Source: Macrostomum lignano
Lineage: Eukaryota
Direction: 5' to 3'
Assembly: GCA_002269645.1 (NCBI GenBank)
Contig: NIVC01001920.1
Coordinates: forward strand, 129,673-193,672
DNA: 64,000 bases
Numbering within the stretch: the first letter of the stretch is position 1; each line of letters begins with the position of its first letter. The notes under the pieces are model-generated. The model saw nothing but the letters and a program-made list of their open reading frames with translations. It had not been told where the DNA came from and ran no database searches. The position numbers and the translations under genes were made by a program. Shown one piece after another: positions 1,463 to 63,860 of the stretch.

Positions 1463-1880
<418 letters not shown>

Positions 1881-3892: not shown

Positions 3893-6601
<2,709 letters not shown>

Positions 6602-10402: not shown

Positions 10403-16430
<6,028 letters not shown>

Positions 16431-27569: not shown

Positions 27570-28240
27570 TATATCCTGTGATGAGTGCCGTACTGATTAG
27601 CTCCTCGGAAGGGCTTCTGCATGCCTTGAGGTTGTCGAACTTGCAGTCAGTGGCCGCCTGGCGGAGACGACTGACGAAATCAGAAATGCTTTCTCCTTGC
27701 AGTTGTTGCGTCTTGAAGAATCGCGCGCGCTCAGCGATTATCAGTTTCTCTTTGGGGCGCAGATACGTGACAAATGTCGTCTGAATATCCTCGAATGAGA
27801 GCTCCGTGAGTGGGCGTGGCGACACCAGACTCTGCAGCTTTTCAAGCGCGGTGAGTCCACAGATAGCGAGAAAGTTGTCAGCGATCGTTTTTTTTTCGGT
27901 TGAATCAGACCAGCCTTTCGCTCTGGCCAGCGCTTGAAAGGCAGTCAGCCAAACCTGTGCTCGGTCAGGTTTATCCAGCGGCAGTTCGCTGAGCTGCGAC
28001 GCCATTGTTGTGAATTGAACTCCGGCTGAAGTATTTAACTCATGAGCTTAAGATTCTTTATATTTCTTATTTGAAAGAGATCAGAAGGGTGAGCTCTAGG
28101 AACTTTGGGCTGGGTTAATTACCATAGAAGAAACTGTAGCGATAGAATGCTTAGAGGCGATTAGTGCAAACAAACGGCATAGAATAAGGAACTTGAACTT
28201 ATATAAACTATAGTGCATCTCAGTGTGCGATACAGCACAA
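27570..28240 (-). mobile_element. Truncated Ty3/gypsy (K02A2.6-like) element: gag N-terminus with possible 5' LTR
   Basis: ORF from 28005 reads 'VWLTAFQALARAKGW...FLAICGLTALEKLQSLVSP..TELSFEDI...YLRPKEKLIIAERARFFKTQQLQGESISDFVSRLRQAATDCKF', a typical gypsy gag. Coding character stops near 27575 in AT-rich DNA. The upstream segment 28006-28240 has TGT...ACA ends (LTR call is tentative). Confidence 0.75.
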
Positions 28241-28483
28241 TTTTCCTCTTGAAATATTTACATAGTTGAACATATTAAAAATTGTTTTCTGATTGGGGGC
28301 AACAATTCTAACCTATTGAAAAAGTGAAAAAAATGAGAATTTTGTCAAAATTTCAATTATATCTAATATCTAATATTAGTTAATTATAAAAAAGGTTTTA
28401 GATTTCGAGTTTAAATTTTAAAGACTTTAAAAAGTCCTTATTTTTATAAATGTCAGTTTTTTTAAGCTTGTCTTTTTATATTT

Positions 28484-36507: not shown

Positions 36508-36706
36508 GTAGGCAGGTAGGTAGGTAGGTAGGTAGGTAGGTAGGTAGGTAGGTAGGTAGGTAGGTAGGTATAGGTAGGTAGGCAGGTAGGTAGGTAGGTT
36601 GGTTGGTAGGTAGGTAGGTAGGTAGGTAGGTACAGTGTAGGTAGGTAGGTATGTAGGTAGGTAGGCACAGTGTAGGTAGGTAGGTAGACATGTTTAGGCA
36701 GATAGT

Positions 36707-36764
<58 letters not shown>

Positions 36765-36827
36765 GGCAGACAGACAGACAGACAGACAGACAGGCAGTCA
36801 GGCAGACAGGCAGGCAGGCAGTCAGGC

Positions 36828-36864
<37 letters not shown>

Positions 36865-36947
36865 GGCAGGCAGGCAGACAGGCAGGCAGTCAGGCAGACA
36901 GACAGGCAGGCAGTCAGGCAGACAGACAGACAGACAGACAGACAGAC

Positions 36948-36987
<40 letters not shown>

Positions 36988-37298
36988 GGCAGACAGGCAG
37001 ACAGACAGACAGGCAGGCAGACAGACAGACAGACAGACAGACAGGCAGGCAGGCAGGCAGACAGACAGGCAGGCAGGCAGACAGGCAGGCAGTCAGGCAG
37101 ACAGACAGGCAGACAGGCAGACAGACAGGCAGGCAGGCAGACAGACAGGCAGGCAGACAGACAGGCAGACAGGCAGGCAGACAGACAGGCAGGCAGGCAG
37201 ACAGGCAGACAGACAGACAGGCAGACAGGCAGGCAGACAGACAGGCAGACAGACAGACAGACAGGCAGGCAGGCAGGCAGACAGGCAGGCAGACACAC
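36508..37298. repeat. Compound microsatellite: (TAGG)n at 36508-36690, then (CAGA/CAGG)n at 36707-37298
   Basis: Direct inspection. Confidence 0.96.
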
Positions 37299-39070
37299 AC
37301 AGAGGCTCTCACCTCAAAGCTGCAAAGGCTCGGGTGCTGCCAGTGAATGCCTGCCTGTGCGCGGTGATTTTGCCAATTTTCGTCTCCGACGCCAAGTAGC
37401 GCGGAAATCTTTCATTTGCTGCTCAATTTATCCCACTAGTCTCATCTCGCATCCCCTACCGATAGGCGAATTTCCAGTCCCCCCTGCTGGGCAGAGGTGA
37501 GCTGTGGGATTGGGCCAAGAGGGGAGCGGTTGCTAGGGGCAGCATACGGGAGACTGGGGAGAGGCCTCAGAGCGGGCGTGTCATTTCGGGCGAAGGCGAG
37601 CATCAGATGGGGCGCATGGGGCTGTTTGCCTGCGGCTGTGGGGACAAGAAGGCCGGTGAAGACATATGCTGGATATTTATGACTCAGATGTGCTCCGTTC
37701 GCGCTCTTCCTGCATGGACATCATCAGCTAAAGGGACGTAGTAGAGACGGGAAAAACAAAAGCATAAATAAAACTGAAAGGGATGGCGAGAGATGGAGAG
37801 AGGGTGGAGAAAATGAGAGATTAGAAAAGAGAAGAGATTAGCCGGTAATGTTCGGCTAATATATTAAAACACAAATCAATAAATGAATGAATTAAAATTG
37901 CAAAAGCAGATGGCGGCACACGTGGGACTTCAAATTATTTACGGATTCTTCAAAGCAGTCAGCCAGTGCAGCTGCTGAATGCCAAATCTGAGCTGTAAAA
38001 TTCATTCCTGCCGCATCTCAGCGGCAATCAGCAATCAAAATCGGGAGCACAGCTTCAGTTGCAGCTTTCCGAGGCACAGAGTAACCATGAGTTTGCGGTA
38101 GATTTTTATCCAAGCTCGCCTCATTCCGCTAGCGCCCGTCTCCCCATTCAGGCTGGGATATCTGGCACAGGCCTATCTGCTCCATGTTCATTTCCCATTC
38201 TCAACAGGCTCCGAGAGGCTGTGGGGAGCGGAAAGTTGGAGCCGACAACGCTTGCGCATCCCGGCAGCCCAGTAACAACATCCGCATTGCGTCATTAATT
38301 ATTAATGACGCCCCGTCGCTGCCTCTGAGCTGGCGGGCCGTATTTTAAGGACGAGAGGAGACTTTCGCCTCTGCCGCGCGGCTCAGCCGCTTACACCTGG
38401 ACAGGTCTCGGCTCTTCGGATTCACTGCGTTGCGTTGCCAATAGCAACCGGTAGGTGAGTGTAGCTGCCGCTGCTATCCATTGACTTGCCTATAATTCTT
38501 ATCTGCCCGGGGCATCGCTGAGCCAGGAGATGTTTGACTTGCCTCTCGAAGCAGTGTTGACAAAAACATTTGTTTAAACAGCAGCGTTTCCGCTATTGAA
38601 GTTGAAAATCAATTTGCTGGAAGACAGCGAGAGCCGCTCTCGCTTTGCTAGCGCGGAGGACAAGCGGAGGCCACAGGCGAGTGCTCGAATTGCTAATCCC
38701 CAGACTGGTAATCCCTAGGATTAGGATTGCAGGCTCTCTTGCAGACAGCCAATGCGCCAGCTTAACGGTTTATCCTAATAGAAGCTTTGTGCAGGCGGAG
38801 GAGCTGACTGAATACCTGAGCAACTGAGGATCTGGGAGGGTGTCCCAGCAGCTGAGAATCTGGGAGGATAGCCCAGAAACTGAGGATCTGGGAGCGTGGC
38901 CCAGCAACTGAGGATCTGAGGGGGAATGGTGGGCCCGGCTAGATTAGCTGAGAAGTCCGACTGACAGCCGAATGCCAGACGAGATCACGTGACCATGTCC
39001 CGGCATGACAGCCGGAAATTCGCATTTGCAGTCTCCGCCATTAACCATCTGGTCCAGCAGCATCGTCCCC

Positions 39071-43787: not shown

Positions 43788-46700
43788 TCAGCCCGTGTAG
43801 TTGCCGCTCTCAAACAGCTGCTCGTCGTAGAAATCGGCTCCAACTCGGCGGCCGCCGAAGTACCGACCATCCAGGCCTTCGATGGCCCTGACGGCCTCGG
43901 CCGGCTCGGCGAACCGGACAAATACAACGACGGTGCCGCCGGTCTCCGGAGCAAAAACCACCAGGTTGGCCACGGTGCCGAACTTGGCGCACTCCTCGGT
44001 GACGTCCTCCTGGAACTGGTCGTCCAGCTCGCTGGCCGAGCCCACCAGGTTGCGCAGGGTTACCACCCGGCTGGGCCGCTGCAGGCGCTGCGTGAGCACC
44101 TGCCGGGCCTCGGAGCCGCGCACTGTCGGCTCGGCCTCCAGCATCTGCTCCGTGCCCGCCGTCTGCCGATCGGCCGCCGCTCCCTGCTGGTTGGCTGCTG
44201 CGGACTCTGAGGGGATTCGAATTCGAGCCGGGAACCGCATAGCAACCAATTTTGAGCAGATATGGACTTACCTGATTGCCTATGGTATGCGGACCAACCA
44301 GCCTGCCTACTATCGAGTAACAAGTAAGGGATTATTTAGAGCGAATCTATGCACTACTTTGCTCAGTAGCTTATAGCTGCATAGACTATCAAGTCCACTT
44401 CCACTGATATTTTAAACCTGCTTATTATGGAAATATCGACTATTAGCCTTCTTTCTGGTGTAGCAAAAGTAATTCTCAGTGCGATTCTCCTGACTGCTCA
44501 ACTACACATGTACATGATGTACTTCCGTGATTCCTGACTGCTCAACTACACATGTACATGATGTACCTCCGTGGTTCTCCTGACTGCTCAACTACACATG
44601 TACATGATGTACCTCCGTGGTTCTCCTGACTGCTCAACTACACATGTACATGATGTATCTCCGTGGTTCTCCTGACTGCTCAACTACACATGTACATGAT
44701 GTACCTCCGTGATTCCTGACTGCTTAACTACACATGTACATGATGTACCTCTGCGATTCCCCTGACTGCTCAACTACACATGTACATGATGTACTTCCGT
44801 GGTTCCCCTGACTGCTCAACTACACATGTACCTTCGTGATTCCTCTGACTGCTCAACTAAATGTTCTCGTACCTCTGCGACCGACCACGCGGCTTATTGA
44901 CCGACAAACCGATAGACAGCTACACGCAGACTTCAGAATGCGAGCGGGCTGTGGACGGGGGTGCGGGAGGGGCAGCGAGTGGAGACGCGACAGGCTGGGG
45001 TGAGAGGAGAGGGCGGGCCTGCGGGGGTCTCAGTAAAAAGTGCACCGACAGACGCCAAGTGCGGCGGGCGGCAACGCCTTCGAATTGAAGACTCAGACAG
45101 CCTTGAAGCGGCCAGAGAGGCTGAGCGCGGGCCCACTGGCTCATCAATCTCTCCAAGTCTGAGCACTGCTAAAATTGGAAGTCGGTCAGGATAGGAGAGA
45201 ATAGCCAGTCGGAGTCTGAGCTGAGCATGACGAGCAAAAGGCCAGAAGTTTTGTAAAATAATCAATTCAGCGAGACTCTAGCTTGGCCTTTGAGCAAGCT
45301 GAGAACAGACAAGAAGCAGAAATCCGGCTTAGAAAGATGAGGCAGGTGGCTTAATGGATAGAAATTTAGAAAAGCAGAAACAGGATTTATGGAAGTGATT
45401 CCAGAAACGGAAATGCAACAAGATATGACTAAAAAATTGCAGGAAGCCTCGATGTAATTGAAAAGTGCAGAGTGAGATGACTGTGGCAGGCATCCGGATC
45501 TGGGATGGCGGTGGCCCAGCAACTGAGGATCTGGGAGGGCGGCCCAGCAGCTGAGGATCTGGGAGGGCAGCCCAGCAACTGAGGATCTGGGATGGCGGTG
45601 GCCCAGCAACTGAGGATCTGGGAGGGCGGCCCAGCAGCTGAGGATCTGGGAGGGCAGCCCAGCAACTGAGGATCTGGGATGGCGGTGGCCCAGCAACTGG
45701 GGATCTGGGATGGTGGTGGCCCAGCAACTGAGGATCTGGGAGGGCAGCCCAGCAACTGAGGATCTGGGAGGGCGGCCCAGCAGCTGAAGATCTAGAAGAT
45801 CGGCCCAGCAGCTGAGGATCTGGGAGGGCGGCCCAGCAGCTGAAGATCTAGAAGATCGGCCCAGCAGCTGAAGATCTGGGAGGGCGGCCCAGCAACTGAG
45901 GATCTGGGAGGGCGGCCCAGCAGCTGAAGATCTGGGAGGGCAGCCCAGCAACTGAGGATCTGGGAGGGCGATTGTCCAGCAACTGAGAATCTGGGATGGT
46001 GGCCCAGCAACTGAGGATCTGGCAGGGCGGCCCAGTAACTGAGGATCTGGGAGGGCAGCCCAGCAACTGAGGATCTGGGAGGGCAGCCTAGCAACTGAGG
46101 ATCTGGGAGGGCAGCCCAGCAACTGAGGATCTGGGAGGGCAGCCCAGCAACTGAGGATCTGGGAGGCTGGCCCAGCAACTGAGGATCTGGGAGGGCGGCC
46201 CAGCAGCTGAAGATCTAGAAGATCGGCCCAGCAGCTGAAGATCTGGGAGGGCGGCCCAGCAACTGAGGATCTGGGAGGGCGGCCCAGCAGCTGAAGATCT
46301 GGGAGGGCAGCCCAGCAACTGAGGATCTGGGAGGGCGATTGTCCAGCAACTGAGAATCTGGGATGGTGGCCCAGCAACTGAGGATCTGGCAGGGCGGCCC
46401 AGTAACTGAGGATCTGGGAGGGCAGCCCAGCAACTGAGGATCTGGGAGGGCAGCCCAGCAACTGAGGATCTGGGAGGGCAGCCCAGCAACTGAGGATCTG
46501 GGAGGGCAGCCCAGCAACTGAGGATCTGGGAGGGCAGCCCAGCAACTGAGGATCTGGGAGGCTGGCCCAGCAACTGAGGATCTGGGAGGGCGGCCCAGCA
46601 ACTGAAGATCTGGGAGGGCGGCCCAGCAACAGAGGATCTGGGAGGGCAGCCCAGCAACTGAGGATCTGGGAGGCTGGCCCAGCAACTGAGGATCTGGGAG

Positions 46701-49700
46701 GGCGGCCCAGCAACTGAGAATCTTACACCAGGAATGGTTGACACCATTGGATAGAAGAGTCAATACAAATGAAACCGTACAGTTGAAGGCTGTACAGCTG
46801 CTCATCATATTCTACGCAATAATGTCTAGTCATGACGTCATAAAATAAGCAATTAAAGCTCAGAAAATCCACAGCGAACAGCGTGTGTCTCACCTTGAGC
46901 TGGCGGAGGCTGACCCGGCTCCGCGGCCTGGGTCCCGGTGGCGGCAGCCGGCTTGGCGGGCTGGTTGGCCAGGGCGGCGGCGAGGCCGGGCATGAGGGTG
47001 GTGGGGTTGGTGATGGCCCGGCCAACGCGGAGCAGCTGGCCGCCCAGGTCGAAATTGTTCATGCTGCCCATGGCGTCAGTGGCGGCTTGGTTCTGAGATT
47101 CAGGCGCGGAAGCAGGGGCGGTGTGCAGCGAATAAAACTGTAGGCTGGCACGTTCGTGGACTGGTCTCTTGGGTCCTTTGGTGGACTGGTCTATTGGGTC
47201 CTTTGGTGGACTGGTCCCCTGGGTCCTTTGGTGGACTGGTCTCTTGGGTCCTTTGGTGGACTGGTCCCCTGGGTCCTTTGGTGGACTGGTCTCTTGGGTC
47301 CTTTGGTGGACTGGTCCCCTGGGTCCTTTGGTGGACTGGTCTCTTGGGTCCTTTGGTGGACTGGTCCCCTGGGTCCTTTGGTGGACTGGTCCCCTGGGTC
47401 CTTTGGTGGACTGGTCTCTTGGGTCCTTTGGTGGACTGGTCCCCTGGGTCCTTTGGTGGACTGGTCCCCTGGGTCCTTTGGTGGACTGGTCTCTTGGGTC
47501 CTTTGGTGGACTGGTCTCTTGGGTCCTTCGGTGGACTGGTCTCTTGGGTCCTTTGGTGGACTGGTCTATTGGGTCCTTTGGTGGACTGGCCTCTGGGTCC
47601 TTTGGTGGACTGGTCTATTGGGTCCTTTGGTGGACTGGTCTCTTGGGTCCTTTGGTGGACTGGTCTCTTGGGTGCTTCGGTGGACTGGTCTCTTGGGTCC
47701 TTTGGTGGACTGGTCTATTGGGTCCTTTGGTGGACTGGTCTCTTGGGTCCTTTGGTGGACTGGTCTATTGGGTCCTTTGGTGGACTGGTCTCTTGGGTCC
47801 TTTGGTGGACTGGTCTCTTGGGTCCTTTGGTGGACTGGTCTATTGGGTCCTTCGGTGGACTGGTCTATTGGGTCCTTCGGTGGAATGGTCCCCTGGGTCC
47901 TTTGGTGGACTGGTCCCCTGGGTCCTTTGGTGGACTGGTCTCTTGGATCCTTCGGTGGAATGGTCCCTTGGGTCCTTTGGTGGACTGGTCCCTGGGTCCT
48001 TTGGTGGACTGGTCCCCTGGATCCTTCGGTGGATTGGTCTCTTGGATCCTTCGGTGGAATGGTCCCCTGGGTCCTTTGGTGGACTGGTCTCTTGGATCCT
48101 TCGGTGGAATGGTCCCCTGGGTCCTCTGGTGAACTGGTCTCTTGGGTCCTTTGGTGGACTGGTCTCTTGGATCCTTCGGTGGAATGGTCCCCTGGGTCCT
48201 CTGGTGAACTGGTCTCTTGGGTCCTTTGGTGGACTGGTCTATTGGGTCCTTCGGTGGAATGGTCTATTGGGTCCTTTGGTGGACTGGTCTCTTGGGTCCT
48301 TTGGTGGACTGTTCTATTGGGTCCTTTGGTGGACTGGTCTATTGGGTCCTTTGGTGGACTGGTCTCTTGGGTCCTTTGGTGGACTGGTCTCTTGGGTCCT
48401 TTGGTGGACTGGTCTATTGGGTCCTTTGGTGGAATGGTCTCTTGGATCCTTCGGTGGAATGGTCCCCTGGGTCCTTTGGTGGACTGGTCTCTTGGATCCT
48501 TCGGTGGAATGGTCCCCTGGGTCCTCTGGTGAACTGGTCTCTTGGGTCCTTTGGTGGACTGGTCTCTTGGATCCTTCGGTGGAATGGTCCCCTGGGTCCT
48601 CTGGTGAACTGGTCTCTTGGGTCCTTTGGTGGACTGGTCTCTTGGATCCTTCGGTGGAATGGTCTATTGGGTCCTCTGGTGAACTGGTCTCTTGGGTCCT
48701 TCGGTGGAATGGTCCCCTGGGTCCTCTGGTGAACTGGTCTCTTGGGTCCTTTGGTGGACTGGTCTCTTGGATCCTTCGGTGGAATGGTCCCCTGGGTCCT
48801 TTGGTGGACTGGTCTCTTGAATCCTTCGGTGGAATGGTCCCCTGGGTCCTTTGGTGGACTGGTCTCTTGGATCCTTCGGTGGAATGGTCCCCTGGGTCCT
48901 CTGGTGAACTGGTCTCTTGGGTCCTTTGGTGGACTGGTCTGTTGGGTCCTTCGGTGGAATGGTCCCCTGGGTCCTCTGGTGAACTGGTCTCTTGGGTCCT
49001 TTGGTGGACTGGTCTCTTGGATCCTTCGGTGGAATGGTCCCCTGGGTCCTCTGGTGAACTGGTCTCTTGGGTCCTTCGGTGGAATGGTCCCCTGGGTCCT
49101 CTGGTGAACTGGTCTCTTGGGTCCTTTGGTGGACTGGTCTCTTGGATCCTTCGGTGGAATGGTCCCCTGGGTCCTCTGGTGAACTGGTCTCTTGGGTCCT
49201 TTGGTGGACTTGTCCCCTGGTCCTTTGGTGGACTGGTCCCTTGGTTCATGTTAACCTAGTCCACTTGCCGCCCCCCACCCAATGACCCACCCACCCAATC
49301 ACCCAATGACCATTGAGGTCTTCTAATAACTTTTTTAAGACAGGCCGCTCAAAGTGCATAGCAACAGACTAAAGCTCTCACCGTCTCATACTGGATGTAG
49401 CCATAGCCCCTGTGCCGCTCCGGCCTCTTGGGGTCGGGCACCAGCGCACAGTACTTGACCGGGCCGAATGCCTCGAACACGGACCGAAGCTCGCTCTCGG
49501 TGAGATCCATGTGCACATTGCACACGTACACAGTGGATTGAAGGCCGCCTTGTTGCACGAGATCTTCAACTAGCTGGGCAGGCTGGGGCACGTTGCTGGG
49601 CCGGCTGACCCGCAAGGTTCGGCCTGTTAGCACCACGCCGTTCATGCTGTCTATGGCCAGGGTCGCCGCCTCGGGCAGGTCGTACTCCACGAAGGCGAAT

Positions 49701-50596
49701 CCCTTGTGCCGTTGCTGCACGGGGTCCCAGCCGACGTCCAGGCTGCGCATCGGGCCGAACGGCATGAAGGCGCGGCGGAGGGCCTCCTCGTTGGCGTCCG
49801 AGCCGATGCCGCCGACGTATACGCGACTGAGCAGCAGCTGGGCCTGCGCTCTGCGGGAGGTGGCGACATGGGATTCAGGGAGCGGTCAGAGAGGATCTTA
49901 GGCTGGGTCAGAGATGATCTTAGGGTGGGTCAGAGATGATCTTAGGGTGGGTCAGAGACGATCTTAGGGTGGGTCAAAGAGGATCTTAGGGTGGGTCAGA
50001 GACGATCTTAGGGTGGGTCAAAGAGGATCTTAGGGTGGGTCAGAGAGGATCTTAGGGTGGGTCAGAGAGGATCTTAGGGTGGGTCAGAGAAGATCTTAGA
50101 GTGGGTCAGAGAGAATCTTAGGGTGGGTAAGAGAGAATCTTCTCTCTGGGTCAGAGAGGATCATGGGGTGCTGGGTGCCTGTGAGTCAGTGAGGATAATG
50201 CTAAATGAAGTGGGTCAGCAAGGATAATTGGGGTAATGAGTCAGAAAGCCATAAATACAATTTGATGTCTGTAAATATTTTTATGTTGATGAGGACACAG
50301 AAAAATTTATACCTTCTCATATTAAGCATCTGCTGGTCCTGGTTATGCTGCGACTGCTTCTGCAAAGCCCGTTGAATGCTGAGCTCCAAAGCGAACCTTT
50401 TGGCGGCCTCCAGCCGGACGGCCTCGTCTCCAGTTGGCCGCTGCACAATGGCGCAGGGCCGGTGCCGCCTGCCGCAGCCAGAGCCGCGGCCCAGCAGAGT
50501 TTTCTGCTCCCACTGGTTGTGCAGGGCGTTGGTGGCTGGCAGGCCGTTGCTGGTCAGCAGGCTGTCTATGGCTGACCTGGCCGGCCGGTCGGCCAT
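43788..50596 (-). CDS. PUF60: Poly(U)-binding splicing factor PUF60 / half-pint, 4 exons (50596-50313, 49850-49382, 47092-46894, 44206-43788), ~456 aa
   Basis: RRM1 'SRVYVGGIG...AFMPFGPMRSLDVGWDPVQQRHKGFAFVEYDLPEAA'. RRM2 'VYVCNVHMDLTESELRSVFEAFGPV...HRGYGYIQYE|NQ...MNNFDLGGQLLRVGRAIT'. C-terminal UHM 'VVTLRNLV...EDVTEECAKFGTV...RYFGGRRV.ADFYD'. Phases 2, 0, 1 are consistent and the total of 1371 nt is in frame. Confidence 0.93.
44489..44860. repeat. ~45-46-bp minisatellite (CCTGACTGCTCAACTACACATGTACATGATGTACCTCCGTGGTTCT) in PUF60 intron 3
   Basis: About 8 copies. Confidence 0.92.
45495..46722. repeat. ~25-bp minisatellite (CCCAGCAACTGAGGATCTGGGAGGG[C]) in PUF60 intron 3
   Basis: About 47 copies; includes an internal 367-bp higher-order duplication. 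Confidence 0.95.
47156..49245. repeat. 25-bp minisatellite (CTGGTCTCTTGGGTCCTTTGGTGGA)n in PUF60 intron 2
   Basis: About 83 copies; source of the spurious Trp/Gly-rich ORFs. Confidence 0.97.
49882..50160. repeat. 22-bp minisatellite (GGGTGGGTCAGAGAGGATCTTA) in PUF60 intron 1
   Basis: About 12 copies. Confidence 0.92.
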
Positions 50597-51645
50597 CACC
50601 CGGACTCGGTAATTATCCACCTGCTGCGGAGGCAATCAGCGTTGGCAGATCATACATTAATATACTGGCATGTGGTATAAATAGGATAAAAACATAAAAG
50701 ACCTGCCAACTAGAGCTTCTAGTTGAAACTGCAATAGCAGGCTTAAAGTGCACAAGCAAAAAAAATGAGCAAACTAATGGCTAATATTTTGACTTTCATT
50801 TGCATAAAACAAAGTCATCATAAGCCTATGCCAAGAGCCTCTTAAGAATTTGTCTGAAGATGCAAAGCTTTCTAGACTTGCAAGACAAAAAGAATGTCAA
50901 AATGAATGGAAATTTGAGTCATAATAAGTCTGCTCTAAAAACCTGAAAATTGGTTTGAAATACTAAGCAAAACTTGAGCAGAACAATTGCATTTGAAGCA
51001 AATTTTAAGATTGCAAAAGTAATCAATTATCTTTACATATACTACAATTAAGAGATAATAGATATATAATCTGCAATTCTGCCAACTCTGCCATCTCTAT
51101 TTAAAATTGGCACATTTATCTTTTTCCTTAATTGTACTTTGATACAGTTGACACAATTATGAAAAATAGTATATTATTATGCCAAACAGAACAAATGATA
51201 GTTGTAAAATAGATTATAATTATGCTACAACTAGGTCAAAATATTCAATAAAGTTCATTTTTGTTACTAATCAACAAATATTTTTTCAATTTTTTTCTAT
51301 GTTTTTATGTGCAATTTGATATAGTTAAGGGACAATTATTATATGATAGGACCCTATTTCAATCAATATATTTAGTACAGAACAGACTTCTTTCTATTAT
51401 GTATTTATTTCTATACAACAAGGCTATTAGCAAACTATTTGTTAGGAACAATGCTAAGGCAAATCAAGATTTTTTTGTATAATAATTAAGTTTTTTTTTC
51501 AAGGGTATCCTGAAAATCATATTATGTGATAGTTGCAAGTGCTGGCTGCTCTCTTAGTATGTTTATTTGCTTTTGTAGATTGACATCAGCTAGCAAAGAA
51601 ACTACAAAAGAAAGGAACTGCAAAGGATTCTGAAAAGTCAGCTGC

Positions 51646-52622
51646 CTATAGTCCGGATCATGCTAGGTACACACTCGAACAAAAATTAAATAATTACAAA
51701 TGCACGCAAAAAATGTTGTGCATGCCCATTCTCAAAAATATGCCGGTGTTTGCAACAATAAATGACCTTTTTTATGTTGTGACAATACAATACCTTTTTT
51801 AAATTGCATAAAAGACCCTTATTATTAGATAATTTGGTTGCTTTTTATGCTTTTTTGGTGATACTATTTATAGCGGAAAATTTAAACACACAAAGACCAT
51901 AGTCAGGATCATGTCATGGTATACACTGGAATAAAAAGTCCCCTAAAAATCTATGCCATTTCATACTGAAATGTATGCCAAGGTTCTAGGAACTTACGCC
52001 AGGTTTTCTAGGCTTTGCGGCAATAAATGACCTTTTTTGCATTACACGGTTTAAAATTTTTTTTATAAATTATTTAACAAATGTGTGGTTTTCATTTAAA
52101 GTAAACTTTCATCTTACAAGTTTTATGGTTTTTATGATTTTATAATAAGATTCTGAGGTTATGGCATTATACCAAAAATTGTTAATATTAACTTTGGCGT
52201 GAAGGTTGGAGTTGGCGTAGGCTGCTTGGCGTATTTACGCCATGGCGTCACGCCAAAAGGTATGCCAAATATATTTTGCCTCATTTTTTATGCCAATTGT
52301 ATGCCAAAAAAAGTAAAATTTTCAATTATACGCCAGAAATTTCTGACGTAATGTACATCATCCTGACTATGGCACAAAGATTTGTTTAAATGCTCTTTTA
52401 CAAGCTTGAAAAAATTGGAAAGCTTGAAATTTGCACTTAAAAATTAATTTTTTTCATCTTTCACAATGACTCTTATGCATGATTCTATAAAGTGCATACT
52501 AGATATGCACATATACTATTCTCTCAGGAGTGATGCACACCAACTGTGCATACCTAATTTTGGCATGCAAGGCCAATGCATACCTGAATTTTTAGGCACA
52601 TACTACATGATCCGGAGTGTGG
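51646..52622. mobile_element. MITE with 8-bp TSD (outer element of a nested pair)
   Basis: Imperfect 17-bp TIR CTATAGTCCGGATCATG / CATGATCCGGAGTGTGG; TSD TCAGCTGC at 51638-51645 and 52623-52630. Confidence 0.8.
51897..52372. mobile_element. 476-bp MITE with 8-bp TSD, nested in a related MITE
   Basis: TIR CCATAGTCAGGATCATG / CATCATCCTGACTATGG; TSD CACAAAGA at 51889-51896 and 52373-52380. Confidence 0.88.
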
Positions 52623-53327
52623 TCAGCTGCATGAATAGGCCTACCCAAGAATTATAGGCCTAAAACTATGATATTGATAAGGTTGATAAAAGCAATTTTA
52701 AATAGATGTTGAGGATAGCTATATTACCTATAAGCCAAGGAGGAAAATTGTGATAAGATGAAAAACACTGAAACATGGCACTCTAGATTGTGCTTGGTGC
52801 ATAAAAACATAAAAACAGGATATAATTCTTCTAATAACCATATAACATAAATAAAACTTCTATACTATACATTATAGAATATGATAGAAAGCAGAGAAAG
52901 ATAAAAAACAACTCATTAAAAAAGCACTCAAGACCAGGATAGAATCTTTGCATTGCATGGCAATTTTGGAATTGAAACTTGTAAAAAGATTAGGCCCTAG
53001 ACTAGCCTAACTATAGGCCTTACCAGCAACTTTTCTACTTTCAAATGGAGTCAACTTGTCTACAAGTTGACAAGTTGGTAGCAGGCAAAGTGATTGGAAT
53101 CCTTCTGAGTTCTGATAGGCCAATGCAATTGCATACTTTAACTTTGTCTTGTCATGTAGTAGGCTAGATGGGGAAAAAGCTTAAAAAATCTCCCATCTAG
53201 CCTAGAAAAAGCTCATCTATTGAGCTTTTTCTTATAGACTAGTCCGACACCCGAAGGCAGTAGGCTAGATGGGAAAAAAGCTTAAAAAATCTCCATCTAA
53301 TGTTTTGAGGGTTGACTTAGTCTTACT

Positions 53328-54791
53328 GGTTCCTGGACACTTCGTCATCTTACTACTTCATCATCCACTTATAAGGCTTATTTCTAGACACTTTGTCATC
53401 TTACCATTTTGTTATCTATGATTCTATTGTGGAAACATCATCATCTAATCCCTGGACACTTTGTCATCCACTTTGTCTGAAAAACTTATTGAATAGCTAT
53501 ATGTAACTTTGTCCACTAAGTTCTATCAAATAGCCTAGTCATAAATATAGGTGGTTACACTGGGGATTAACTAACTGATAATTAATGAGGATTAACTACA
53601 ATGAGGGAAGAGCTGGAAAAGAGAAGGGATCGCGATCAGTACAAAATTGAATTCTACTTGCAGTTTGAATACCATGGCATACAATATCTTGGAATTATAT
53701 AGTAAAACAAAAATAATTAAAAATTATAAATATGCATACCTAAATAGCAAAATTAAATATAACTTAAAAAATAGTACTGTGGTAAAGTTTCATGTCTGAG
53801 AAAAAGTAAAATTAAGAAGGTGAGCGCTATCATTTTTTATGTGACATGTTTTGCCTTACGTCAGGCATTGTCAGGCTCTTAAAATTAGTAACGATTTATT
53901 TGTTCATTATTATTTAACAATTAAGACTAAGAACTGGTCAATAAAGAGTCCTTACCTTAGAGTATTCTAGGTGTACACTTGTGCTCATCTCACACTCTCT
54001 CTCTCTCTCTCCCCTCATTGCAACTCTGAGCGCTCCATCGGACTGTACAATCTACTATTAATTTATATACATTTCTGTTTTTATCGACCCGTTCTTAGTC
54101 TTAATTGTTAAATATTAATAAGCAAATAAATCATTACTAATTTTAAGAGCCTGACGATGCCTGATGCGAGGCAAAACATGTTGCATAAAAAATGATAGCG
54201 CTGAGAACTTTCTTAGTTTAACTTAAAAATACATAATAATAAATACACAAAAATACACTATTCATAAACATAATTAAATCTACATCGTTACAACTCCACG
54301 ACAAGGACGACTAAGTCGTCCTTGCTCCACGCATTGTTGTGGAAGCGAAGCTATAATAAAATTAGGTTATCTTCAAGTTTCGTTCGTTTAATTCCAACAC
54401 CCACCCCCACCACCCTTGAATAGAGGGCGAAATAATTCCGGAAATAATTAAACGAACGAAACTTGAAGATTGCCTAAAATTACAATGAACACTTGTACAC
54501 ATACAGCGTGCATTTAGATGCCAATTATAGCGAGAAGTTGAATTCCTAAGCATGTATTTAATCCTATATTTTACAGACTATTGATTGAGAAACAATTTAC
54601 ATGTATAAAAAAACAATCGAATAACTATTTTACAGCTTCGCGAAATCTTGGGATGACGAAGTGTCCTCAAAATTTGGTCACTTTGTTATCTAGATTTCTA
54701 AAAAAATTTTTGTATGACGAAGCGTCCAAAAACCATGGTCACTTTGTCATCTGGATGACGAACTGGTAAGATGACGAAGTGTCCAGGAACC
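53328..54791. mobile_element. 1464-bp non-autonomous TIR element (GG-start TIR, 8-bp TSD; Merlin/Mutator-like)
   Basis: Perfect 26-bp TIR GGTTCCTGGACACTTCGTCATCTTAC (53328-53353 / 54766-54791); TSD GTCTTACT at 53320-53327 and 54792-54799; no transposase ORF. Confidence 0.88.
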
Positions 54792-55960
54792 GTCTTACTT
54801 AAGTAGTAAGTTAGCGGTTTAGCCTACCAAAATAATTTTTTAGGAACTTTGGCCAAAGTTTATATGGGATCTGTAAGCTTATTAGTCATATTATAGTTGC
54901 GCAGTTTTCAACTGGTAGCTGTTCTTTTCACCTAACAGACATGAATCTCAAACTGTTAATCATGCTTTAAGAAGAAAGCAGAACACTGCCTTTGTTTATT
55001 TCAAATAAAGTGAATTCGAACAATTATAAAAAGAATCGATTGACACTTTAAATAAAAGTGTAAGCAGCTTAAAGACTAAAACAAAAAGGCACTTTTAAAT
55101 TTAAATAACCCTAGCGTTACACAACTTCTACCAACCAAAACTTTTCTAATTAAAAAATAAACTTTTAACAGTAAAACTAATAGCAATTTTGTTGCGGCTC
55201 TATAGACTCAAATTACCGTTTCAGAAACTTAAACGGTTCAGATTTTTATACTTGATTACACTCTTGACATACGAGTACAATTGCAACTGCTGCGTTTCAC
55301 ACGGTTTTTAAGCAGGGGTACTTATTTTTTGTTTTGGTGCAAAAAAGTTGTACCTAAAACTGCCATTATACCTTGATCATTACTCTTGTGATTAGGGGCG
55401 AGAAAAATGCAGTTTCGTATTAAGCATTGAGTTTTTAATAGGTATTTGAGTTTGAAGCTACTGCCTACTGCATGAGTGAAATAAATTATTTATTACGTTA
55501 TGTTGAATTTGTATTTTATTTTTAATTGATAAGTTTACTGTTTTGCCCTAATGATGCATAAAAATTATAATTTAGTAAACTATCATTTCATTAATTTAAT
55601 TAGTGTAAGTAATTGCAACATTATTGTCGTTTTAAATTATATACCATGGAGTCTAGACTTATGTTTAAATTAGCCTGCATCAGCTTCGTGGTTTTATAAT
55701 AATATTGTATACCGAAATCGTATTGAAAATAAATATTTTCAATGAAATAATGCAATATTAAAAATCGTTCATAATTTTATGAATAAATTTCCCTTCTCAT
55801 TTCACTTTTTAAGAAATAATTAACTTATGGAACCAAAAGAAGTTAAGCCAACTGCCATTTGTTTACTATAATATAACTTCATAAAGACACGTCTCTTGAG
55901 TATGATCACTTCATTTAATATCATTTAATTTCTTTCTAATAAACTAGTCAAGTTTTTTAG

Positions 55961-58463
55961 CAAACTAATGTTACATTCAAGGAGCATCTGACATCACACA
56001 TTGGGCTGTGCGAGCTTCCGCAGCCGGCTCTGGATCTGCTGACACGCCAGCTGGACTGGCGAGACCTCCTCAGCCTGGGTCGCGTTTGTCGCCGCCTCCG
56101 CACTGCTGCCTCGCGCGACTCGCTGTGGTTCGCAATCTGCGCGCGCCGCGGGTGGACAAAATTCGGTCTACCTGGTGCCGAGTCGCTCCTCTCGCCAGCG
56201 GACGCCGACGCCGCTAGTGAAGGTCGCTTTGGTGGCTGTAGCAGCGGGGGTGCTTTTGGCACGTCGCCAGTTTTTCCTGGGCCGTCGAGTGCCGAGGAGG
56301 AGCTGCTTTGGGGCCGGTGGAAGATGGTGTTTCTCAAGGCAAGGTGAGAGGATTTGCTCAACCCAGTCAACTGTCAATATGCCAATCTGGCAAGGTGAGG
56401 TGGCCCCCATTTCTTGCCAACTATTCAAGAGGTTATAACTCAAAGGATTCTGAAAGGAGCCATCAAATCACATGGCTGACGTACATGCCGAGAATTACAC
56501 CGCGTGACAACATAAAAACTGCTAATCTGCTAATTTTACCGTAGACTTGTAGGGCGTCAGTTCCCCAGGAATCCCCAGGCTACAAAGCCAACACCCTTAG
56601 GCCTGGCTTTGTGTCCTGCCACGACTCTTTCGCTTTCGCAACGCGCAGATACTTAAAGAAGAGCTGGTCAACAGGCAGATACTTGGTCTCGCCGCCGTTG
56701 AGGCCTCCAAAATCAGCGAATCCCTCTGGCTGCGACAGCGCCATCAGCGCCTTCGCTTGCAACTCCAGCGTGGCCGTCACCGGCACTGGCGAGGGCCTGC
56801 TTTGCGTGTGGCACTGCCGCAGGGCTCAGCTGATGGCCCTGCGGCTGATGGACGATCCGGTGAGGGCTGGAGCTTCTTGGATGCTGCAAAAATTTAGTCT
56901 AGACTTTATACGAGTACTTCAGGGTTGCGTAGCCCAGTGGTCCAGCGCGGCGCTTTGATGTACCAGCGGCCCAGGCTCGATTCCAAGTGCAGTCACATTA
57001 ATTTGGGGCTAAATTGGAATCCCCACTTGGGTCTGCTCGTGCAAACTAACGGCCTTGAGGGCCAACGACCAAGGCACAGTGGAGTAATGTACAGTACATG
57101 CCTAACGATAAATAAAGTTAGGGCCGCTGTACACTCCTGTGTGAGTGTGTGCGTATGACTGCGTACTTACGCTGCGTACTTATCTGCGCGCTTGTGTGCC
57201 TGCTCAGGAGAGTCGGTGGAATGGGCAGTAATGCCTCTTGCTGGATGTCGTTTAAAGTGCGCCAGGGTGTACACGGACAGCCCCTGCATCCAACCTCTAC
57301 CTACCTGTACGAGTACTTCATTCCGCTGTGTTCCCCGCACAGATCTGCTCCATCTGCATCGGCTCCGCTGGCAGTGGCAGCAGCGGTGGCAGCTGCTTCG
57401 TCTATATTGGCTGCGACAATGGCATCGCGTACGAGATGGAGCTGACTGGTGCAGCTTCGTGTGATAAGGCAGCTTCGGAATGGAATCTACAGCAGCTGAC
57501 GGTGCGCAGGTGCTTTCGCTGCTGCTCCGAGTTCGACAGCGAAGGCGGTCTTGAAGTTCAACTGCTGTGCTTTGTGCGTTGCGAGGACTTTCTGCAGCTG
57601 TCTGGGTCTGGTAAGCAATACTTTGCTACTTACAGTAGCTAGGCAAGATTGAGTGTCATTTTTAGAATATTTTCAAAGATCTGAAAGTGCTCGGGCTTGA
57701 GTTAAACCCATCCCACACAGAGCCCTCACCGGACGCCAGCCTGCTGCAGTCCAACATGCTTATTGCCTACACGAGCAGCGGCAGCCTAAGCTCCTGGCGC
57801 CTCGACACGGGCGCTCGCATCGGCGCCTGTCTGAGCGCAGGGCAGTCAGCTGGAGGCGGCGACTGTGACACCCTGGCTTCCAGCTCCGTCTCGCATCAGC
57901 TGCTGGCTGTGGGCTCCTGGGATTGCGCCGTGCTGCTGTTTGACTGCCTCGCCTGCAGGCAGCTAGCAGCTCTGGCTGGCCACAGGGAGGCTGTGTCCTG
58001 CATCTGGCTGGAGGCATCGACAGGCCGACTGGCCACGGGCAGCCTCGATGGCAGCGTCCGTCTTTGGCGATTCAGCTTTGGCGACGGCCGGTTTTGCAGC
58101 GCAGGCGCGCCGACGATCATGCGGGACTGCCACCCGGAGGTGTACTGCCTGGCCAGCCACGCCCACCTGCTGGCCAGCGGCGGCTCCGACTCCGAAATAC
58201 TCATCAGCGACTGGTCCGGCCAGCAGCTGCACCGTCTCTGCGGTCACGTGGGCGTGGTGCGCAACCTGAGCATGAGCCGCCTGCGGCTGGTGTCCAGCGG
58301 TGACGTGCGCAAAGTGATGGTCTGGGACTACAGGAGAGGCAAGCAGCTCAGCGTGCTACACCGGAACCCAACTCTGGTGCAGTTCATGCACGCCTGCGAC
58401 ACTTTGCTGGTCTTGGCGGCTCCCGGCAAGGCCGGCTGTCTGGTTTGCATCGCCTACTGGTAG
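55961..58463 (+). CDS. F-box/WD40-repeat protein, 4 exons (55961-56343, 56553-56859, 57343-57610, 57721-58463), ~566 aa lacking a genomic initiator ATG before the F-box
   Basis: The open frame from 55961 (absent from the ORF track) encodes F-box 'LCELPQPALDLLTRQLDWRDLLSLGRVCRRLRTAASRDSLWFAICARRGW'. WD40 repeats follow: 'LLAVGSWDCAVLLFD', 'LAGHREAVSCI...LATGSLDGSVRLW', 'LLASGGSDSEILISDW', 'LCGHVGVVR...LVSSGDVRKVMVWD'. GT-AG junctions with phases 2, 0, 1. Confidence 0.85.
56922..57307 (+). mobile_element. tRNA-derived SINE, copy 2, in intron 2 of the F-box/WD40 gene
   Basis: A-box TAGCCCAGTGG and B-box GGCTCGATTCC. Body shared with copy 1 (e.g. AAGTTAGGGCCGCTGTACACTCCT, GGAATGGGCAGTAATGCCTCT). 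13-bp TSD TACGAGTACTTCA at 56909-56921 and 57308-57320. Confidence 0.9.
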
Positions 58464-61537: not shown

Positions 61538-61735
61538 CGAGACTTTTTTAGTACATTAAAATACAAAGATTAAAATGAAACAGGTTGATAATCTATGGTT
61601 GGTCGGATTTCCGAAGTCTGTATAGGAATGACTCGGCTGTAACAACAAATGATACGTACATGTAATTGAATCTTTACTTCATGTAGAAGTTTTCAATTTT
61701 CCTTCCTGGCAGTACAAAGTCCCGTCACTCAGCCT

Positions 61736-63860
61736 TCAGAACTCCAGGCACGGGTTGCTGGGAGCATCCGATGCGGTGCCGCAAATCGAGGGGCTCCCGG
61801 CCTCGCTGGCCTCGACTGGCTGGTCGGCGGTGGTCTCGCAGCGCCAGGAGGCCCGCAGGCTCAGCCGGATCGGCTGTGCCCGCGCCTGAGCCGCCCGCTG
61901 GGAGGCGCCACCTTCAATGCGGCTACCCAGCCGGGAGCTGCCAGCCTGCAGGCACTGGCGCTCCGACCGCGCGCTCTCCTGACCCGCGCGCTTCCGGCGC
62001 AGCAGGCGCCAGAAGCCGAAGGTGGCGCTGAACGCCTGGCGGAACTGCTTGCTCATGCAGCAGTACAGCACGAAGTTCACCGAGTTGTTCACCAGGGCCA
62101 AGGTGTTGAGCAGCGCTGCGTAGGCACCCATGAAGCACTGGACCGCCGGCAGGCCCAGTTGCTCGTCCTCGAGGATGTTCAGCATGCTGACCGGGATCTC
62201 GTAGACGATGTACAGCACAATGATGACCATTAGGAAGGCGGTGGTGCGCCTGTGGCGCCGGGACCTGCGCTCGTGCCTGGCCGACCCGGGCTTCGGGTTC
62301 GCCAGCGATTCGCGACGGCGCTCGGTGCGGCGCAGACAGCGGATGATGCAGCAGCAGAGCCCCGCCATCAGCAGGCAGGGCAGCGCCTTCTGGGCCAGGC
62401 AGTTGAACAGCCGGATCTTGAAGGCGTGCCGCTGCTCCATCGACACCTGATCAGGCGATTGGGGTCGTCAAGCCCTCAGCTGAGCACAAAGCTACATGTA
62501 TACCCTTTAAATAAGCCCCAGATTGCACTCAGCTGAGCAGCAGATTACACTCAGCTGAGCAATAGATTACACTCAGCTGAGCACCAGATTACACTCAGCT
62601 GAGCACCACATTACACTCAGCTGAGCATCAGATTGCACTCAGCTGAGCATCAGATTACACTCAGCTGAGCATCAGATTACACTCAACTGAGCATCAGATT
62701 ACACTCAGCTGAGCATCAGATTACACTCAACTGAGCAGCAGATTACACTCAGCTGAGCACCAGATTACACTCAGCTGAGCACCAGATTACACTCAGCTGA
62801 GCACCACATTACACTCAGCTGAGCATCAGATTACACTCAGCTGAGCATCAGATTGCACTCAGCTGAGCATCAGATTGCACTCAGCTGAGCATCAGATTAC
62901 ACTCAACTGAGCAGCAGATTACACTCAGTTGAGCACCAGATTACACTCAGCTGAGCACCAGATTACACTCAGCTGAGCACCACATTACACTCAGCTGAGC
63001 ATCAGATTACACTCAGCTGAGCATCAGATTGCACTCAGCTGAGCATCAGATTGCACTCAGCTGAGCATCAGATTACACTCAACTGAGCAGCAGATTACAC
63101 TCAGCTGAGCACCAGATTACACTCAGCTGAGCACCAGATTACACTCAGCTGAGCACCAGATTACACTCAGCTGAGCACCAGATTACACTCAGCTGAGCAC
63201 CAGATTACACTCAGCTGAGCACCAGATTACACTCAGCTGATGGGGATCCAGGTACCAAAAACAAGTTCACAACGGTACCCACAGCCCCCCCCAGCTCACC
63301 TGGTAGGCGGTTTCGTTTCCGGCCACGCTGCCTCCCTGCTGCCTCAGCGGCTCCACCCTCAGATTCGCCGCGTACGGCGCCAGCGCGGCGCAGTTCGCCA
63401 GAAAGGCGAGCAGCAGCGCCAGGCGCGCCCTGGCCAGGCCGAACCAGACCTTCGTGCGCGGCGCGGCATAGTACTGCAAGTAGAAGAAGCGAAACAAGGC
63501 CAGCAGGACTCCGCACCAGAGAGCGAAGGCGTGCATCAGGTACATGACGACATTGCAGACAAGCAGCGCCGCCTGCCAGCCGTAGCTGCTGGCCGCCCGC
63601 TGGAACTGGGCCTGCAGAACTGCCGCAGCCAGGAAAATGAGCACCTTGCTGAGGTCGCTGACCGCGATGCCCAGCAGGATGCTGTTGGTCGGCGTGACCA
63701 TCTTGCGCTGGCTGAACACGGCGATGTTGAAGCAGTTCATCAGCACCGACAGCAGCGAGATGCTGCCGATCACCGGGACGCTGACGGCCGCAAAGCTCAG
63801 GCTGAGGGAGCTCTCCGGGCAGGTGGGGCCGGTTGAGTTGTCGAGGCCGACGCTGGACAT
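61736..63860 (-). CDS. Class A peptide GPCR of the myosuppressin/sex-peptide/FMRFamide receptor-like group, 2 exons (63860-63300, 62446-61736), ~423 aa
   Basis: TM1 'SVLMNCFNIAVFSQRKMVTPTNSILLGIAVSDL'; TM3 end 'GVLLALFRF' replacing DRY; TM5 'KALPCLL'; TM6 'TTAFLMVIIVLYIVYEIP'; TM7 'LVNNSVNFVLYCCMSKQFRQAF'. Junction CAG|GTGAGC...TCAG|GTG, phase 0. Confidence 0.88.
62518..63240. repeat. 22-bp minisatellite (CAGATTACACTCAGCTGAGCAY)n filling the GPCR intron
   Basis: About 33 copies; each unit contains the palindrome CTCAGCTGAG. Confidence 0.96.

What the first reader, a model, noticed from the sequence alone, without database searches (positions are those of the whole stretch)
55950..56345. F-box exon with no start codon: initiator Met may come from a trans-spliced leader AUG
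Seen: the F-box of the F-box/WD40 gene lies in an open frame with no in-frame ATG until 56324, which is after the F-box. The frame begins exactly at the first base after a T-rich acceptor (AAGTTTTTTAG|CAAACT, 55960/55961); the acceptor's TAG is itself an in-frame stop. A second possible acceptor (TTCAAG|GAG, 55981) is also phase 0. The 5 kb upstream is AT-rich MITE DNA with no convincing coding exon, and the next gene (PUF60) points away. Established: flatworm spliced leaders end in AUG and can supply the initiator Met. Inference: SL trans-splicing yields M-QTNVTFKEHLTSHIGLCELP..., so the F-box, and hence SCF coupling, would depend on trans-splicing. Unspliced RNA would hit an out-of-frame ATG at 55968 or give an F-box-less WD40 protein.
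Basis: partly seen in the sequence, partly recalled or inferred. Interest (0 to 1): 0.8.

Follow-up and report, generated by a model that had tools for sequence, protein, structure and literature searches.

The report
F-box gene lacking its own start codon
A Macrostomum lignano F-box/WD40 gene has no genomic start codon before its F-box, so the AUG that ends this flatworm's spliced leader probably starts the protein; that mechanism is already known, and no RNA data could be reached to prove it here.

Summary
The frame opens at 55961, directly after TTTTTTAG, whose TAG is an in-frame stop. It holds a Pfam-significant F-box (56009-56143). The first in-frame ATG is at 56324. An out-of-frame ATG at 55968 opens only a 7-codon ORF.

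The organism is Macrostomum lignano: two UniProt models match the window's product at 99-100% identity. Its 35-nt spliced leader ends in ATG, and 30-39% of its genes are trans-spliced.

One UniProt model (A0A1I8HP31) starts, without Met, at the very same residue (QTNVTF...). A related transcript from another organism starts with Met only 6 residues before the F-box LP motif, so a short N-terminus occurs in this family.

The leader-supplied-AUG reading is therefore the best explanation (about 0.5), but it is not shown, because no leader-containing reads could be reached.

Rivals remain:
- a phase-compatible cis exon exists (ATG 55551/55554 to 55604, GTAAGT donor), at chance frequency and with non-coding composition;
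- translation may start at 56324 and give an F-box-less protein;
- the 5' end may have been truncated by the AT-rich DNA.

A leader AUG acting as initiator has been established in flatworms since 2006 and is noted in Macrostomum annotation papers. If true, this is an ordinary new instance.

The parts
55935..55960 (+). 3' splice acceptor region: branch-like CTAAT, a T6 tract and AG (TTCTAATAAACTAGTCAAGTTTTTTAG). Its TAG (55958-55960) is an in-frame stop. Proposed trans-splice acceptor.
   Evidence: Sequence read and translation. It does not match the top M. lignano trans-acceptor motif [T/C]TNCAG, which is found at 44% of sites.
55961..56343 (+). Exon 1 of the F-box/WD40 gene. Phase 0 at its 5' end, donor CAAG|GTGAGA. 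The first 14 codons are AT-rich (GC3 0.36 against 0.75 in the rest).
   Evidence: UniProt A0A1I8HP31 starts at the first codon and is 95/96 identical over residues 1-96.
55968..55991 (+). Out-of-frame ATG opening a 7-codon ORF (MLHSRSI*). It would be met by ribosomes on RNA that carries no in-frame upstream AUG, or by leaky scanning.
55980..55984 (+). Two further AG dinucleotides (AAG|GAG at 55981/55982 and GAG|CAT at 55984/55985). Both are phase 0 and are alternative acceptor candidates without a pyrimidine tract.
   Evidence: Sequence and phase count.
56009..56143 (+). F-box domain (residues 17-61 of the exon 1 frame).
   Evidence: PF12937, 29-34 bits against a cut-off of 24.3. It aligns with the F-boxes of relatives.
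56324..56326 (+). First in-frame genomic ATG, downstream of the F-box. It is the start of UniProt model A0A1I8F382 (MVFLKAR...).
56649..56859 (+). Exon 2, which encodes the conserved W..GRY..PPLR motif. A tandem alternative acceptor at 56678/56679, 30 nt downstream, removes YLKKSWSTGR.
57343..57610 (+). Exon 3.
   Evidence: identical to P0060 and P0210.
57721..58463 (+). Exon 4 (WD40 repeats, stop TAG 58461-58463). The CACAG acceptor is taken from the UniProt models.
   Evidence: WD40 families.
55551..55604 (+). Rival feature: a candidate cis-spliced 5' exon (ATG 55551 or 55554, MMHKNYNLVNYHFINLIS). Its donor is AGT|GTAAGT, it is phase 0, and it would leave a 356-nt intron ending at 55960. GC is 15%.
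   Evidence: Candidates with a GT[AG]AG donor number 3 in phase 0, 0 in phase 1 and 3 in phase 2, which is chance level.
50640..55960 (.). AT-rich block (31-38% GC) between the divergent PUF60 and F-box genes. It must contain the promoter and outron, or any upstream exon. One MITE-like inverted repeat lies at 53823-54202.
50313..50596 (-). First coding exon of PUF60, the divergent neighbour. Its own ATG is at 50596-50594.

Best explanation
This is the 5' end of a Macrostomum lignano gene for an F-box/WD40 substrate receptor (534 codons in four exons, 55961-58463).

Shown: the genomic ORF has no start codon ahead of its F-box, and the frame opens at a T-rich 3' splice site.

Inferred, step by step:
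1. A primary transcript starts somewhere in the AT-rich DNA upstream.
2. Its 5' part (the outron) is removed, and the 35-nt spliced leader is joined at 55960|55961, or less likely at 55981|55982.
3. The leader's terminal AUG becomes the first AUG of the mRNA, in frame with CAA ACT AAT...
4. Scanning ribosomes then start there and make M-QTNVTFKEHLTSHIGLCELP..., which carries the F-box.
5. RNA that is not trans-spliced would yield only the 7-codon ORF at 55968 or, by re-initiation at 56324, a WD40 protein without an F-box.
For: - Organism: the window's product is 99% identical to UniRef100_A0A1I8F382. It is 95/96 and 216/216 identical to the in-frame parts of UniRef100_A0A1I8HP31. Both are M. 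lignano.
- Leader: the M. lignano spliced leader ends in ATG. 30-39% of genes are trans-spliced, and conserved genes are enriched among them (PMC8629364, PMC5730564). From the numbers I estimate that about 45% of conserved genes are trans-spliced.
- Start codon: there is no in-frame ATG from the upstream stop (55958-55960) to 56324, although a significant F-box lies at 56009-56143.
- Frame: the leader AUG would be in frame at every AG between the stop and the F-box.
- Public model: A0A1I8HP31 begins, without Met, at the codon right after the acceptor.
- Upstream DNA: no homologue of the family's N-terminal region was found anywhere in the window. The longest + strand ORF in the 5.3 kb upstream is 73 aa, in 31-38% GC DNA.
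- Family: a related transcript (L001) starts M-DFVEVLP, with Met 6 residues before the F-box LP. A minimal N-terminus therefore occurs in the family.
- Precedent: the leader AUG is in frame in 28% of trans-spliced S. mansoni mRNAs, and more than 40 cDNAs need it. Macrostomum annotators call the final ATG a likely translation start.
Against: - No RNA evidence was reachable: no leader-containing read, cDNA or assembled transcript of this locus.
- The acceptor is TAG, not the CAG of the commonest M. lignano trans-acceptor motif.
- The start of A0A1I8HP31 is ambiguous. The codon after the acceptor is also the codon after an in-frame stop, and that model is a draft with a frameshifted stretch.
- A phase-compatible cis exon with a good donor exists 356 nt upstream.
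- Several relatives carry about 55 residues before the F-box, so upstream coding sequence could have been expected.
- The first 14 codons are compositionally unlike the rest of the CDS.
Confidence: 0.5

Rival explanations
1. This is an ordinary cis-spliced gene. A short 5' exon in the AT-rich DNA carries the real ATG and is spliced to the acceptor at 55960|55961. The best candidate is ATG 55551/55554 to 55604 (MMHKNYNLVNYHFINLIS) with donor AGT|GTAAGT and a 356-nt intron. Some other exon with a weaker donor is also possible.
For: - The candidate is phase 0, open, and has a consensus GTAAGT donor. Its intron length lies within the range of this gene's other introns (68-483 nt by my first model; 110-483 nt with exon 4 starting at 57721).
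- Flatworm acceptors are widely shared between cis- and trans-splicing (PMC12582326).
- More than half of M. lignano genes are not trans-spliced.
- Relatives often have extra residues before the F-box.
Against: - Candidates occur at chance frequency: 3 in phase 0 (two share one donor), 0 in phase 1 and 3 in phase 2.
- The candidate is 15% GC with GC3 0.22, against GC3 0.75 for the gene.
- It has no similarity to the N-terminal region of relatives.
- The public model A0A1I8HP31 has no such exon.
Confidence: 0.27
2. This locus makes no F-box-bearing protein. Either translation starts at ATG 56324 and gives an F-box-less WD40 protein, as in UniProt model A0A1I8F382, or this is one of the many duplicated M. 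lignano copies whose original 5' coding end was cut off by insertion of the AT-rich DNA and is decaying.
For: - The change from AT-rich to GC-rich sequence falls at about 55995-56002, inside the ORF and just before the F-box.
- The first 14 codons look like the flank.
- Several relatives have about 55 more N-terminal residues.
- M. lignano is highly duplicated: 79% of BUSCO genes are duplicated and 180 Mb lies in duplicated blocks.
- Both UniProt models end at ...GGGD, which suggests a truncated or erroneous second copy.
Against: - The F-box frame is intact for 121 codons upstream of 56324. It has high GC3 and a Pfam-significant domain, which is unexpected for untranslated sequence.
- The whole 534-codon ORF is open.
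- WD40 receptors without an F-box cannot join SCF (established knowledge), so conservation of the F-box argues that it is translated.
Confidence: 0.15
3. Translation starts at a near-cognate codon in the exon, on an mRNA whose 5' end lies just downstream of the TAG. The candidates are the in-frame CTG at 55988 and the in-frame CTG at 56006.
For: In-frame CTG codons lie before the F-box. Non-AUG initiation is documented in leader-bearing taxa (PMC9851317).
Against: - The CTG at 55988 has C at position -3, a poor context.
- The out-of-frame ATG at 55968 lies upstream of both CTGs and would capture scanning ribosomes.
- A transcript start inside a 27-nt window would be needed.
Confidence: 0.05

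Closest known systems
Schistosoma mansoni mRNAs that take their initiator Met from the 3'-terminal AUG of the spliced leader (Cheng, Cohen, Ndegwa and Davis, J Biol Chem 2006; cited in PMC9851317 and PMC12582326)
   Same: A flatworm spliced leader ending in AUG, a recipient ORF open from the acceptor with no AUG of its own before essential sequence, and a leader AUG that is in frame and first in the mRNA.
   Different: In S. mansoni the junctions were seen in cDNAs and translation from the leader AUG was tested. Here the junction is inferred from genomic sequence and from one Met-less public gene model only.
slORFs: reading frames created by start codons inside spliced leaders (slORFfinder, PMC9851317)
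   Same: The same concept: the leader supplies the start codon of the recipient ORF.
   Different: slORFs are called from leader-containing reads and ribosome footprints, and many are new or alternative ORFs. Here the ORF is the gene's main, conserved ORF, and no reads were available.
SL trans-splicing in Macrostomum lignano (PMC8629364; PMC5730564; PMC10468722)
   Same: Same organism and same leader. Conserved genes are enriched among recipients. Repeat-rich DNA upstream of trans-spliced genes is common, and annotators note that the final ATG is a likely start codon.
   Different: The commonest trans-acceptor motif is [T/C]TNCAG, whereas this site is TTTTAG. Whether this gene is among the 21,754-28,273 trans-spliced genes was not checkable here.
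Metazoan F-box/WD40 proteins auto-named 'F-box/WD repeat-containing protein 7-like' (Styela clava XP_039248417, Rhopilema esculentum XP_065065321)
   Same: Homology over the whole length: the F-box, the W..GRY..P.LR linker motif, the WD40 propeller and the C-terminal HRNP...SP...YW. Identity is 23-31%.
   Different: Several of these relatives have a region of about 55 residues before the F-box that is absent here. One related transcript (L001) also lacks it and starts with a genomic ATG. The window protein also has a Gly/Ser-rich insert and an extra segment in the propeller region.

Membership tests
Flatworm mRNA whose initiator Met comes from the spliced-leader AUG | The organism has a spliced leader that ends in AUG. 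| tested here: met
   The organism is identified as M. lignano by 99-100% identity to two UniProt entries. The leader sequence ends in ATG (PMC8629364).
Flatworm mRNA whose initiator Met comes from the spliced-leader AUG | The leader is physically joined to the mRNA at the acceptor in front of the ORF. | not testable with these tools
   No reads or transcripts of this locus were reachable. Exact look-ups of 10 full-length variants and 3 partial products failed. There is no SL RNA gene in the window.
Flatworm mRNA whose initiator Met comes from the spliced-leader AUG | The leader AUG is in frame with the main ORF, with no intervening stop. | tested here: met
   The acceptors at 55961, 55982 and 55985 are all phase 0, and the frame is open to 56343.
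Flatworm mRNA whose initiator Met comes from the spliced-leader AUG | There is no genomic in-frame AUG upstream of essential coding sequence in the recipient exon. | tested here: met
   The first in-frame ATG is at 56324, and the F-box lies at 56009-56143.
Flatworm mRNA whose initiator Met comes from the spliced-leader AUG | There is no cis-spliced upstream exon supplying an in-frame AUG. | tested here: inconclusive
   One phase-0 candidate has a GTAAGT donor (55551/55554-55604). It occurs at chance frequency and has non-coding composition. There is no homology hit upstream.
F-box/WD40 (FBXW-type) SCF substrate receptor | An F-box domain. | tested here: met
   PF12937, 29-34 bits against a cut-off of 24.3.
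F-box/WD40 (FBXW-type) SCF substrate receptor | A C-terminal WD40 beta-propeller. | tested here: met
   PF00400, 33.9 bits against 27. There are matches to the FBXW7 and beta-TrCP propellers in the PDB at E about 1e-10. It aligns with FBXW7-like proteins.
F-box/WD40 (FBXW-type) SCF substrate receptor | Binds Skp1 and assembles into SCF. | not testable with these tools
   Needs biochemistry. No structure prediction was run.
   One hairpin-like pair with 123-nt arms lies at 53823-54202, and there are shorter inverted repeats. The 5.5-kb block has no other copy in the window. No genome-wide search was possible.

The most novel reading that the evidence does not exclude
The gene's ancestral 5' coding end was cut off by insertion of the AT-rich DNA. 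Several relatives have about 55 residues before the F-box, and the AT/GC boundary sits inside the ORF just before the F-box. On this reading, a chance acceptor in the inserted DNA plus the spliced-leader AUG rescued an F-box-proximal start. The leader AUG would then act as a buffer that lets flatworm genes survive 5' truncation. The choice between trans-spliced and unspliced RNA would switch the product between an SCF-coupled receptor and an F-box-less WD40 protein.
Probability: 0.12. Interest if true: 0.5.

Novelty: new member of a known kind. Interest (0 to 1): 0.22.

Why it matters
If confirmed, this gene is a clean example in a free-living model flatworm of a conserved domain, the F-box, whose translation depends entirely on trans-splicing.

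That has a practical consequence for annotation. Pipelines that trim the leader, including its ATG, produce Met-less or N-terminally truncated models. The two UniProt entries show exactly this: one starts at Q, and the other starts at the downstream Met and loses the F-box.

Biologically it adds little. A leader AUG acting as initiator has been established since 2006. It is expected to apply to many of the more than 20,000 trans-spliced M. lignano genes.

Tried and rejected
- All three word-indexed protein searches found no close relative, neither with exon 1, nor with the full protein, nor with PUF60. They evidently do not return M. lignano proteins, because P0210 exists in the collection but was not returned.
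- The HMMER scan of cluster representatives found the M. lignano entry P0060, and that settled the organism.
- Exact look-ups failed for ten full-length variants: with or without a leading M, both exon 2 acceptors, the T/A variant, and the start at 56324.
- Contig look-ups for P0060 and for two last-exon ORFs also failed.
- The 5' ends of four related Logan/JGI transcripts (L001, L002, L003, L007) were read to look for a leader-derived start codon. None shows a flatworm-type leader, and their organisms are unknown.
- The M. lignano leader sequence is not in the window. Rfam and ARAGORN found nothing.
- A profile of the family's N-terminal region against the six-frame window gave a best E-value of 0.53.
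- blastn of the AT-rich block against the rest of the window gave no hits.
- I considered that the 12-mer AGCAAACTAATG, at 50768 and 55959, might be a target-site duplication flanking the whole AT-rich block. I rejected this: the flanks are unrelated, there is no poly(A) or terminal-inverted-repeat signature, and 3% of shuffles give such a match.
- The bacterial promoter/terminator scan is not meaningful for this eukaryote.
- My first exon 1 end (56345) and exon 4 start (57679) were wrong. They were corrected to 56343 and 57721.
Full report
**Observation.** In the frame of the F-box, TAG at 55958-55960 is followed from 55961 by QTNVTFKEHLTSHIGLCELPQPALDLLTRQLDWRDLLSLGRVCRRLRTAASRDSLW.... The first in-frame ATG is at 56324. 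The only other ATGs between 55900 and 56345 are 55902 and 55968, both in frame +1, and 55968 opens MLHSRSI*. Pfam finds F-box-like PF12937 above its curated cut-off at residues 17-61, which is 56009-56143, and WD40 PF00400 above its cut-off further on. TAG 55958-55960 is preceded by a T6 tract and a CTAAT, so it reads as a 3' splice site. I corrected one detail: the exon 1 donor is CAAG|GTGAGA, so the exon ends at 56343.

**Gene model.** The exons are 55961-56343, 56649-56859, 57343-57610 and 57721-58463, giving 534 codons and a stop. The donors are GTGAG, GTGAG and GTAAG, and the internal acceptors are all CAG. These fit the M. lignano cis motifs GT[G/A]AG and CAG. The start of exon 4 and a tandem alternative acceptor in exon 2 (56679) come from comparison with the UniProt models. 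The upstream exon 2 acceptor keeps the motif W..GRY..PPLR, which is conserved in all relatives.

**Organism.** The word-indexed protein search returned nothing close. The exhaustive HMMER scan found P0060, which is 99% identical over 199 residues. P0060 is UniRef100_A0A1I8F382 of Macrostomum lignano, and its 90% cluster also holds UniRef100_A0A1I8HP31, named 'F-box domain-containing protein', also from M. lignano. The latter is 95/96 identical to exon 1 and identical to exons 2-4 as far as it goes. In between it has a stretch read in the +1 frame plus part of intron 1, so it is a draft model over an indel. The window is therefore M. lignano or a near-identical line. [quoted passage not shown]

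**What is known about the mechanism.** M. lignano has one 35-nt spliced leader, CGGTCTCTTACTGCGAAGACTCAATTTATTGCATG. Between 30% and 39% of its genes are trans-spliced, with enrichment among conserved genes. All reported flatworm leaders end in ATG. [quoted passage not shown] 2006, as cited in PMC9851317).

**Evidence for it at this locus.**
- The F-box lies upstream of the first genomic Met, so the start must come from upstream of 56009.
- The leader AUG would be in frame at 55961, 55982 and 55985. It would also be the first AUG of the mRNA, because the leader holds no other ATG (my reading of the sequence).
- The public model A0A1I8HP31 starts at Q of QTNVTF without Met. Its builders therefore found neither an ATG nor an upstream exon.
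- The 5.3 kb upstream is 31-38% GC, and its longest + strand ORF is 73 aa. It has no match to a profile of the relatives' N-terminal region.
- A related transcript from another organism (L001) begins M-DFVEVLP, with Met six residues before the LP of the F-box. A protein that is little more than Met plus F-box at its N-terminus therefore occurs in this family.

**Why it is not proven.**
- No RNA data for the locus could be reached.
- The in-frame argument is weak. All five AGs from 55959 to 56023 are phase 0, against 36% elsewhere in the CDS, and NAG codons are common.
- The N-terminus of A0A1I8HP31 is ambiguous, because the first codon after the acceptor is also the first codon after a stop.
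- The acceptor is TAG rather than the CAG of the top trans-acceptor motif, which is present at 44% of sites.
- A scan for ATG-initiated open segments ending at GT[AG]AG found a phase-0 candidate, ATG 55551/55554 to 55604 with AGT|GTAAGT, that would leave a 356-nt intron. Such candidates occur equally in a wrong phase (3, 0 and 3). This one is 15% GC with GC3 0.22, against 0.75 for the gene. I rate it unlikely but not excluded.

**An unexplained feature.** Base composition changes from AT-rich to GC-rich at about 55995-56002, which is inside the ORF. The first 14 codons have GC3 0.36, below the 5th percentile of 14-codon windows in the rest of the CDS. Four relatives have a conserved region of about 55 residues before the F-box, and the window protein's first residues align only with its end. 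This fits a history in which the original 5' coding part was lost or displaced by the AT-rich DNA, with the present start, whatever it is, being secondary. It could equally mean that this copy no longer makes an F-box protein. I keep that as a rival at 0.15.

**Verdict.** A cis-spliced 5' exon follows at about 0.27, an F-box-less or truncated locus at about 0.15, and non-AUG initiation at about 0.05. Even if right, this is a further instance of a mechanism known since 2006 and expected to be frequent in this species, so interest is low. Its main practical value is as an annotation warning. The two UniProt models of this gene are respectively Met-less and F-box-less for this very reason.

Noticed in passing
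window 56645-56688: There is a tandem duplicated acceptor, GCAGATACTT, at 56645 and 56675. The two acceptors are 30 nt apart and in frame. UniProt A0A1I8F382 uses the downstream one, which removes YLKKSWSTGR, a motif (W..GRY) conserved in all relatives. This is either alternative splicing or a model error.
   Followed up: partly
window 57857-57875 (…GGCGGCGACTGTGACACC…): Both UniProt models of this gene end at ...SAGQSAGGGD, whereas the window ORF continues for 199 more codons. A 2-bp slip in the TGTG here would create GAC TGA. This suggests a second, truncated copy or an error in the older assembly.
   Followed up: no
window 56920-57000 (intron 2): A tRNA-like stretch carries box A- and box B-like motifs (TAGCCCAGTGGT ... 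GGCTCGATTCC). It may be a tRNA-derived SINE fragment. ARAGORN and Rfam find nothing.
   Followed up: partly
window 50596-50630, minus strand: The 5' end of PUF60 shows an acceptor-like TTGCCTCCGCAG|CAG 27 nt before its own ATG. The frame is open in between, so a leader AUG joined there would also be in frame and would add 10 residues (M-QVDNYRVRV-MADRP).
   Followed up: no
window 50768-50779, 51425-51435 and 55957-55970: The 12-mer AGCAAACTAATG, which spans the acceptor and the first codons of exon 1, recurs at 50768 next to the PUF60 end of the AT-rich block. An 11-mer, TTAGCAAACTA, recurs at 51427. About 3% of shuffles give a 12-mer match. The flanks are unrelated.
   Followed up: partly
window 1400-2000, 4700-5400, 10400-16450, 36700-37300: There are very long tetranucleotide arrays. 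One runs for about 6 kb with no G on the + strand (GC skew -1.0 at 12-16 kb), reading as SIYL/SINL repeats. There are also (CTGT)/(ACAG)-type arrays.
   Followed up: no
window 45260-46750 and 47150-49260: Two large GC-rich minisatellite arrays lie inside or next to PUF60 introns. They give long spurious ORFs on both strands, with repeats of the types PPRSSVAGPPSQILSCWAALPDPQLLG and LGPLVDWSLGSFGGLVSWVLWWTG.
   Followed up: no
window 19770-22480 and 27480-28005: There are retroelement-like ORFs. One has a CCHC zinc knuckle (CFRCLRTGHLSKAC), and there are protease/RT-like pieces on the + strand and a gag-like ORF on the - strand.
   Followed up: no
window 3890-6900 and 61730-63860, minus strand: There are rhodopsin-type GPCR-like ORFs at both ends of the window. 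They were not analysed.
   Followed up: no
tools (vs 37, 40): The word-indexed protein search did not return the two M. lignano UniRef entries, which share over 95% identity with the query. The exhaustive representative scan did return one of them. Negative results from the word-indexed search for this organism are therefore not informative.
   Followed up: yes
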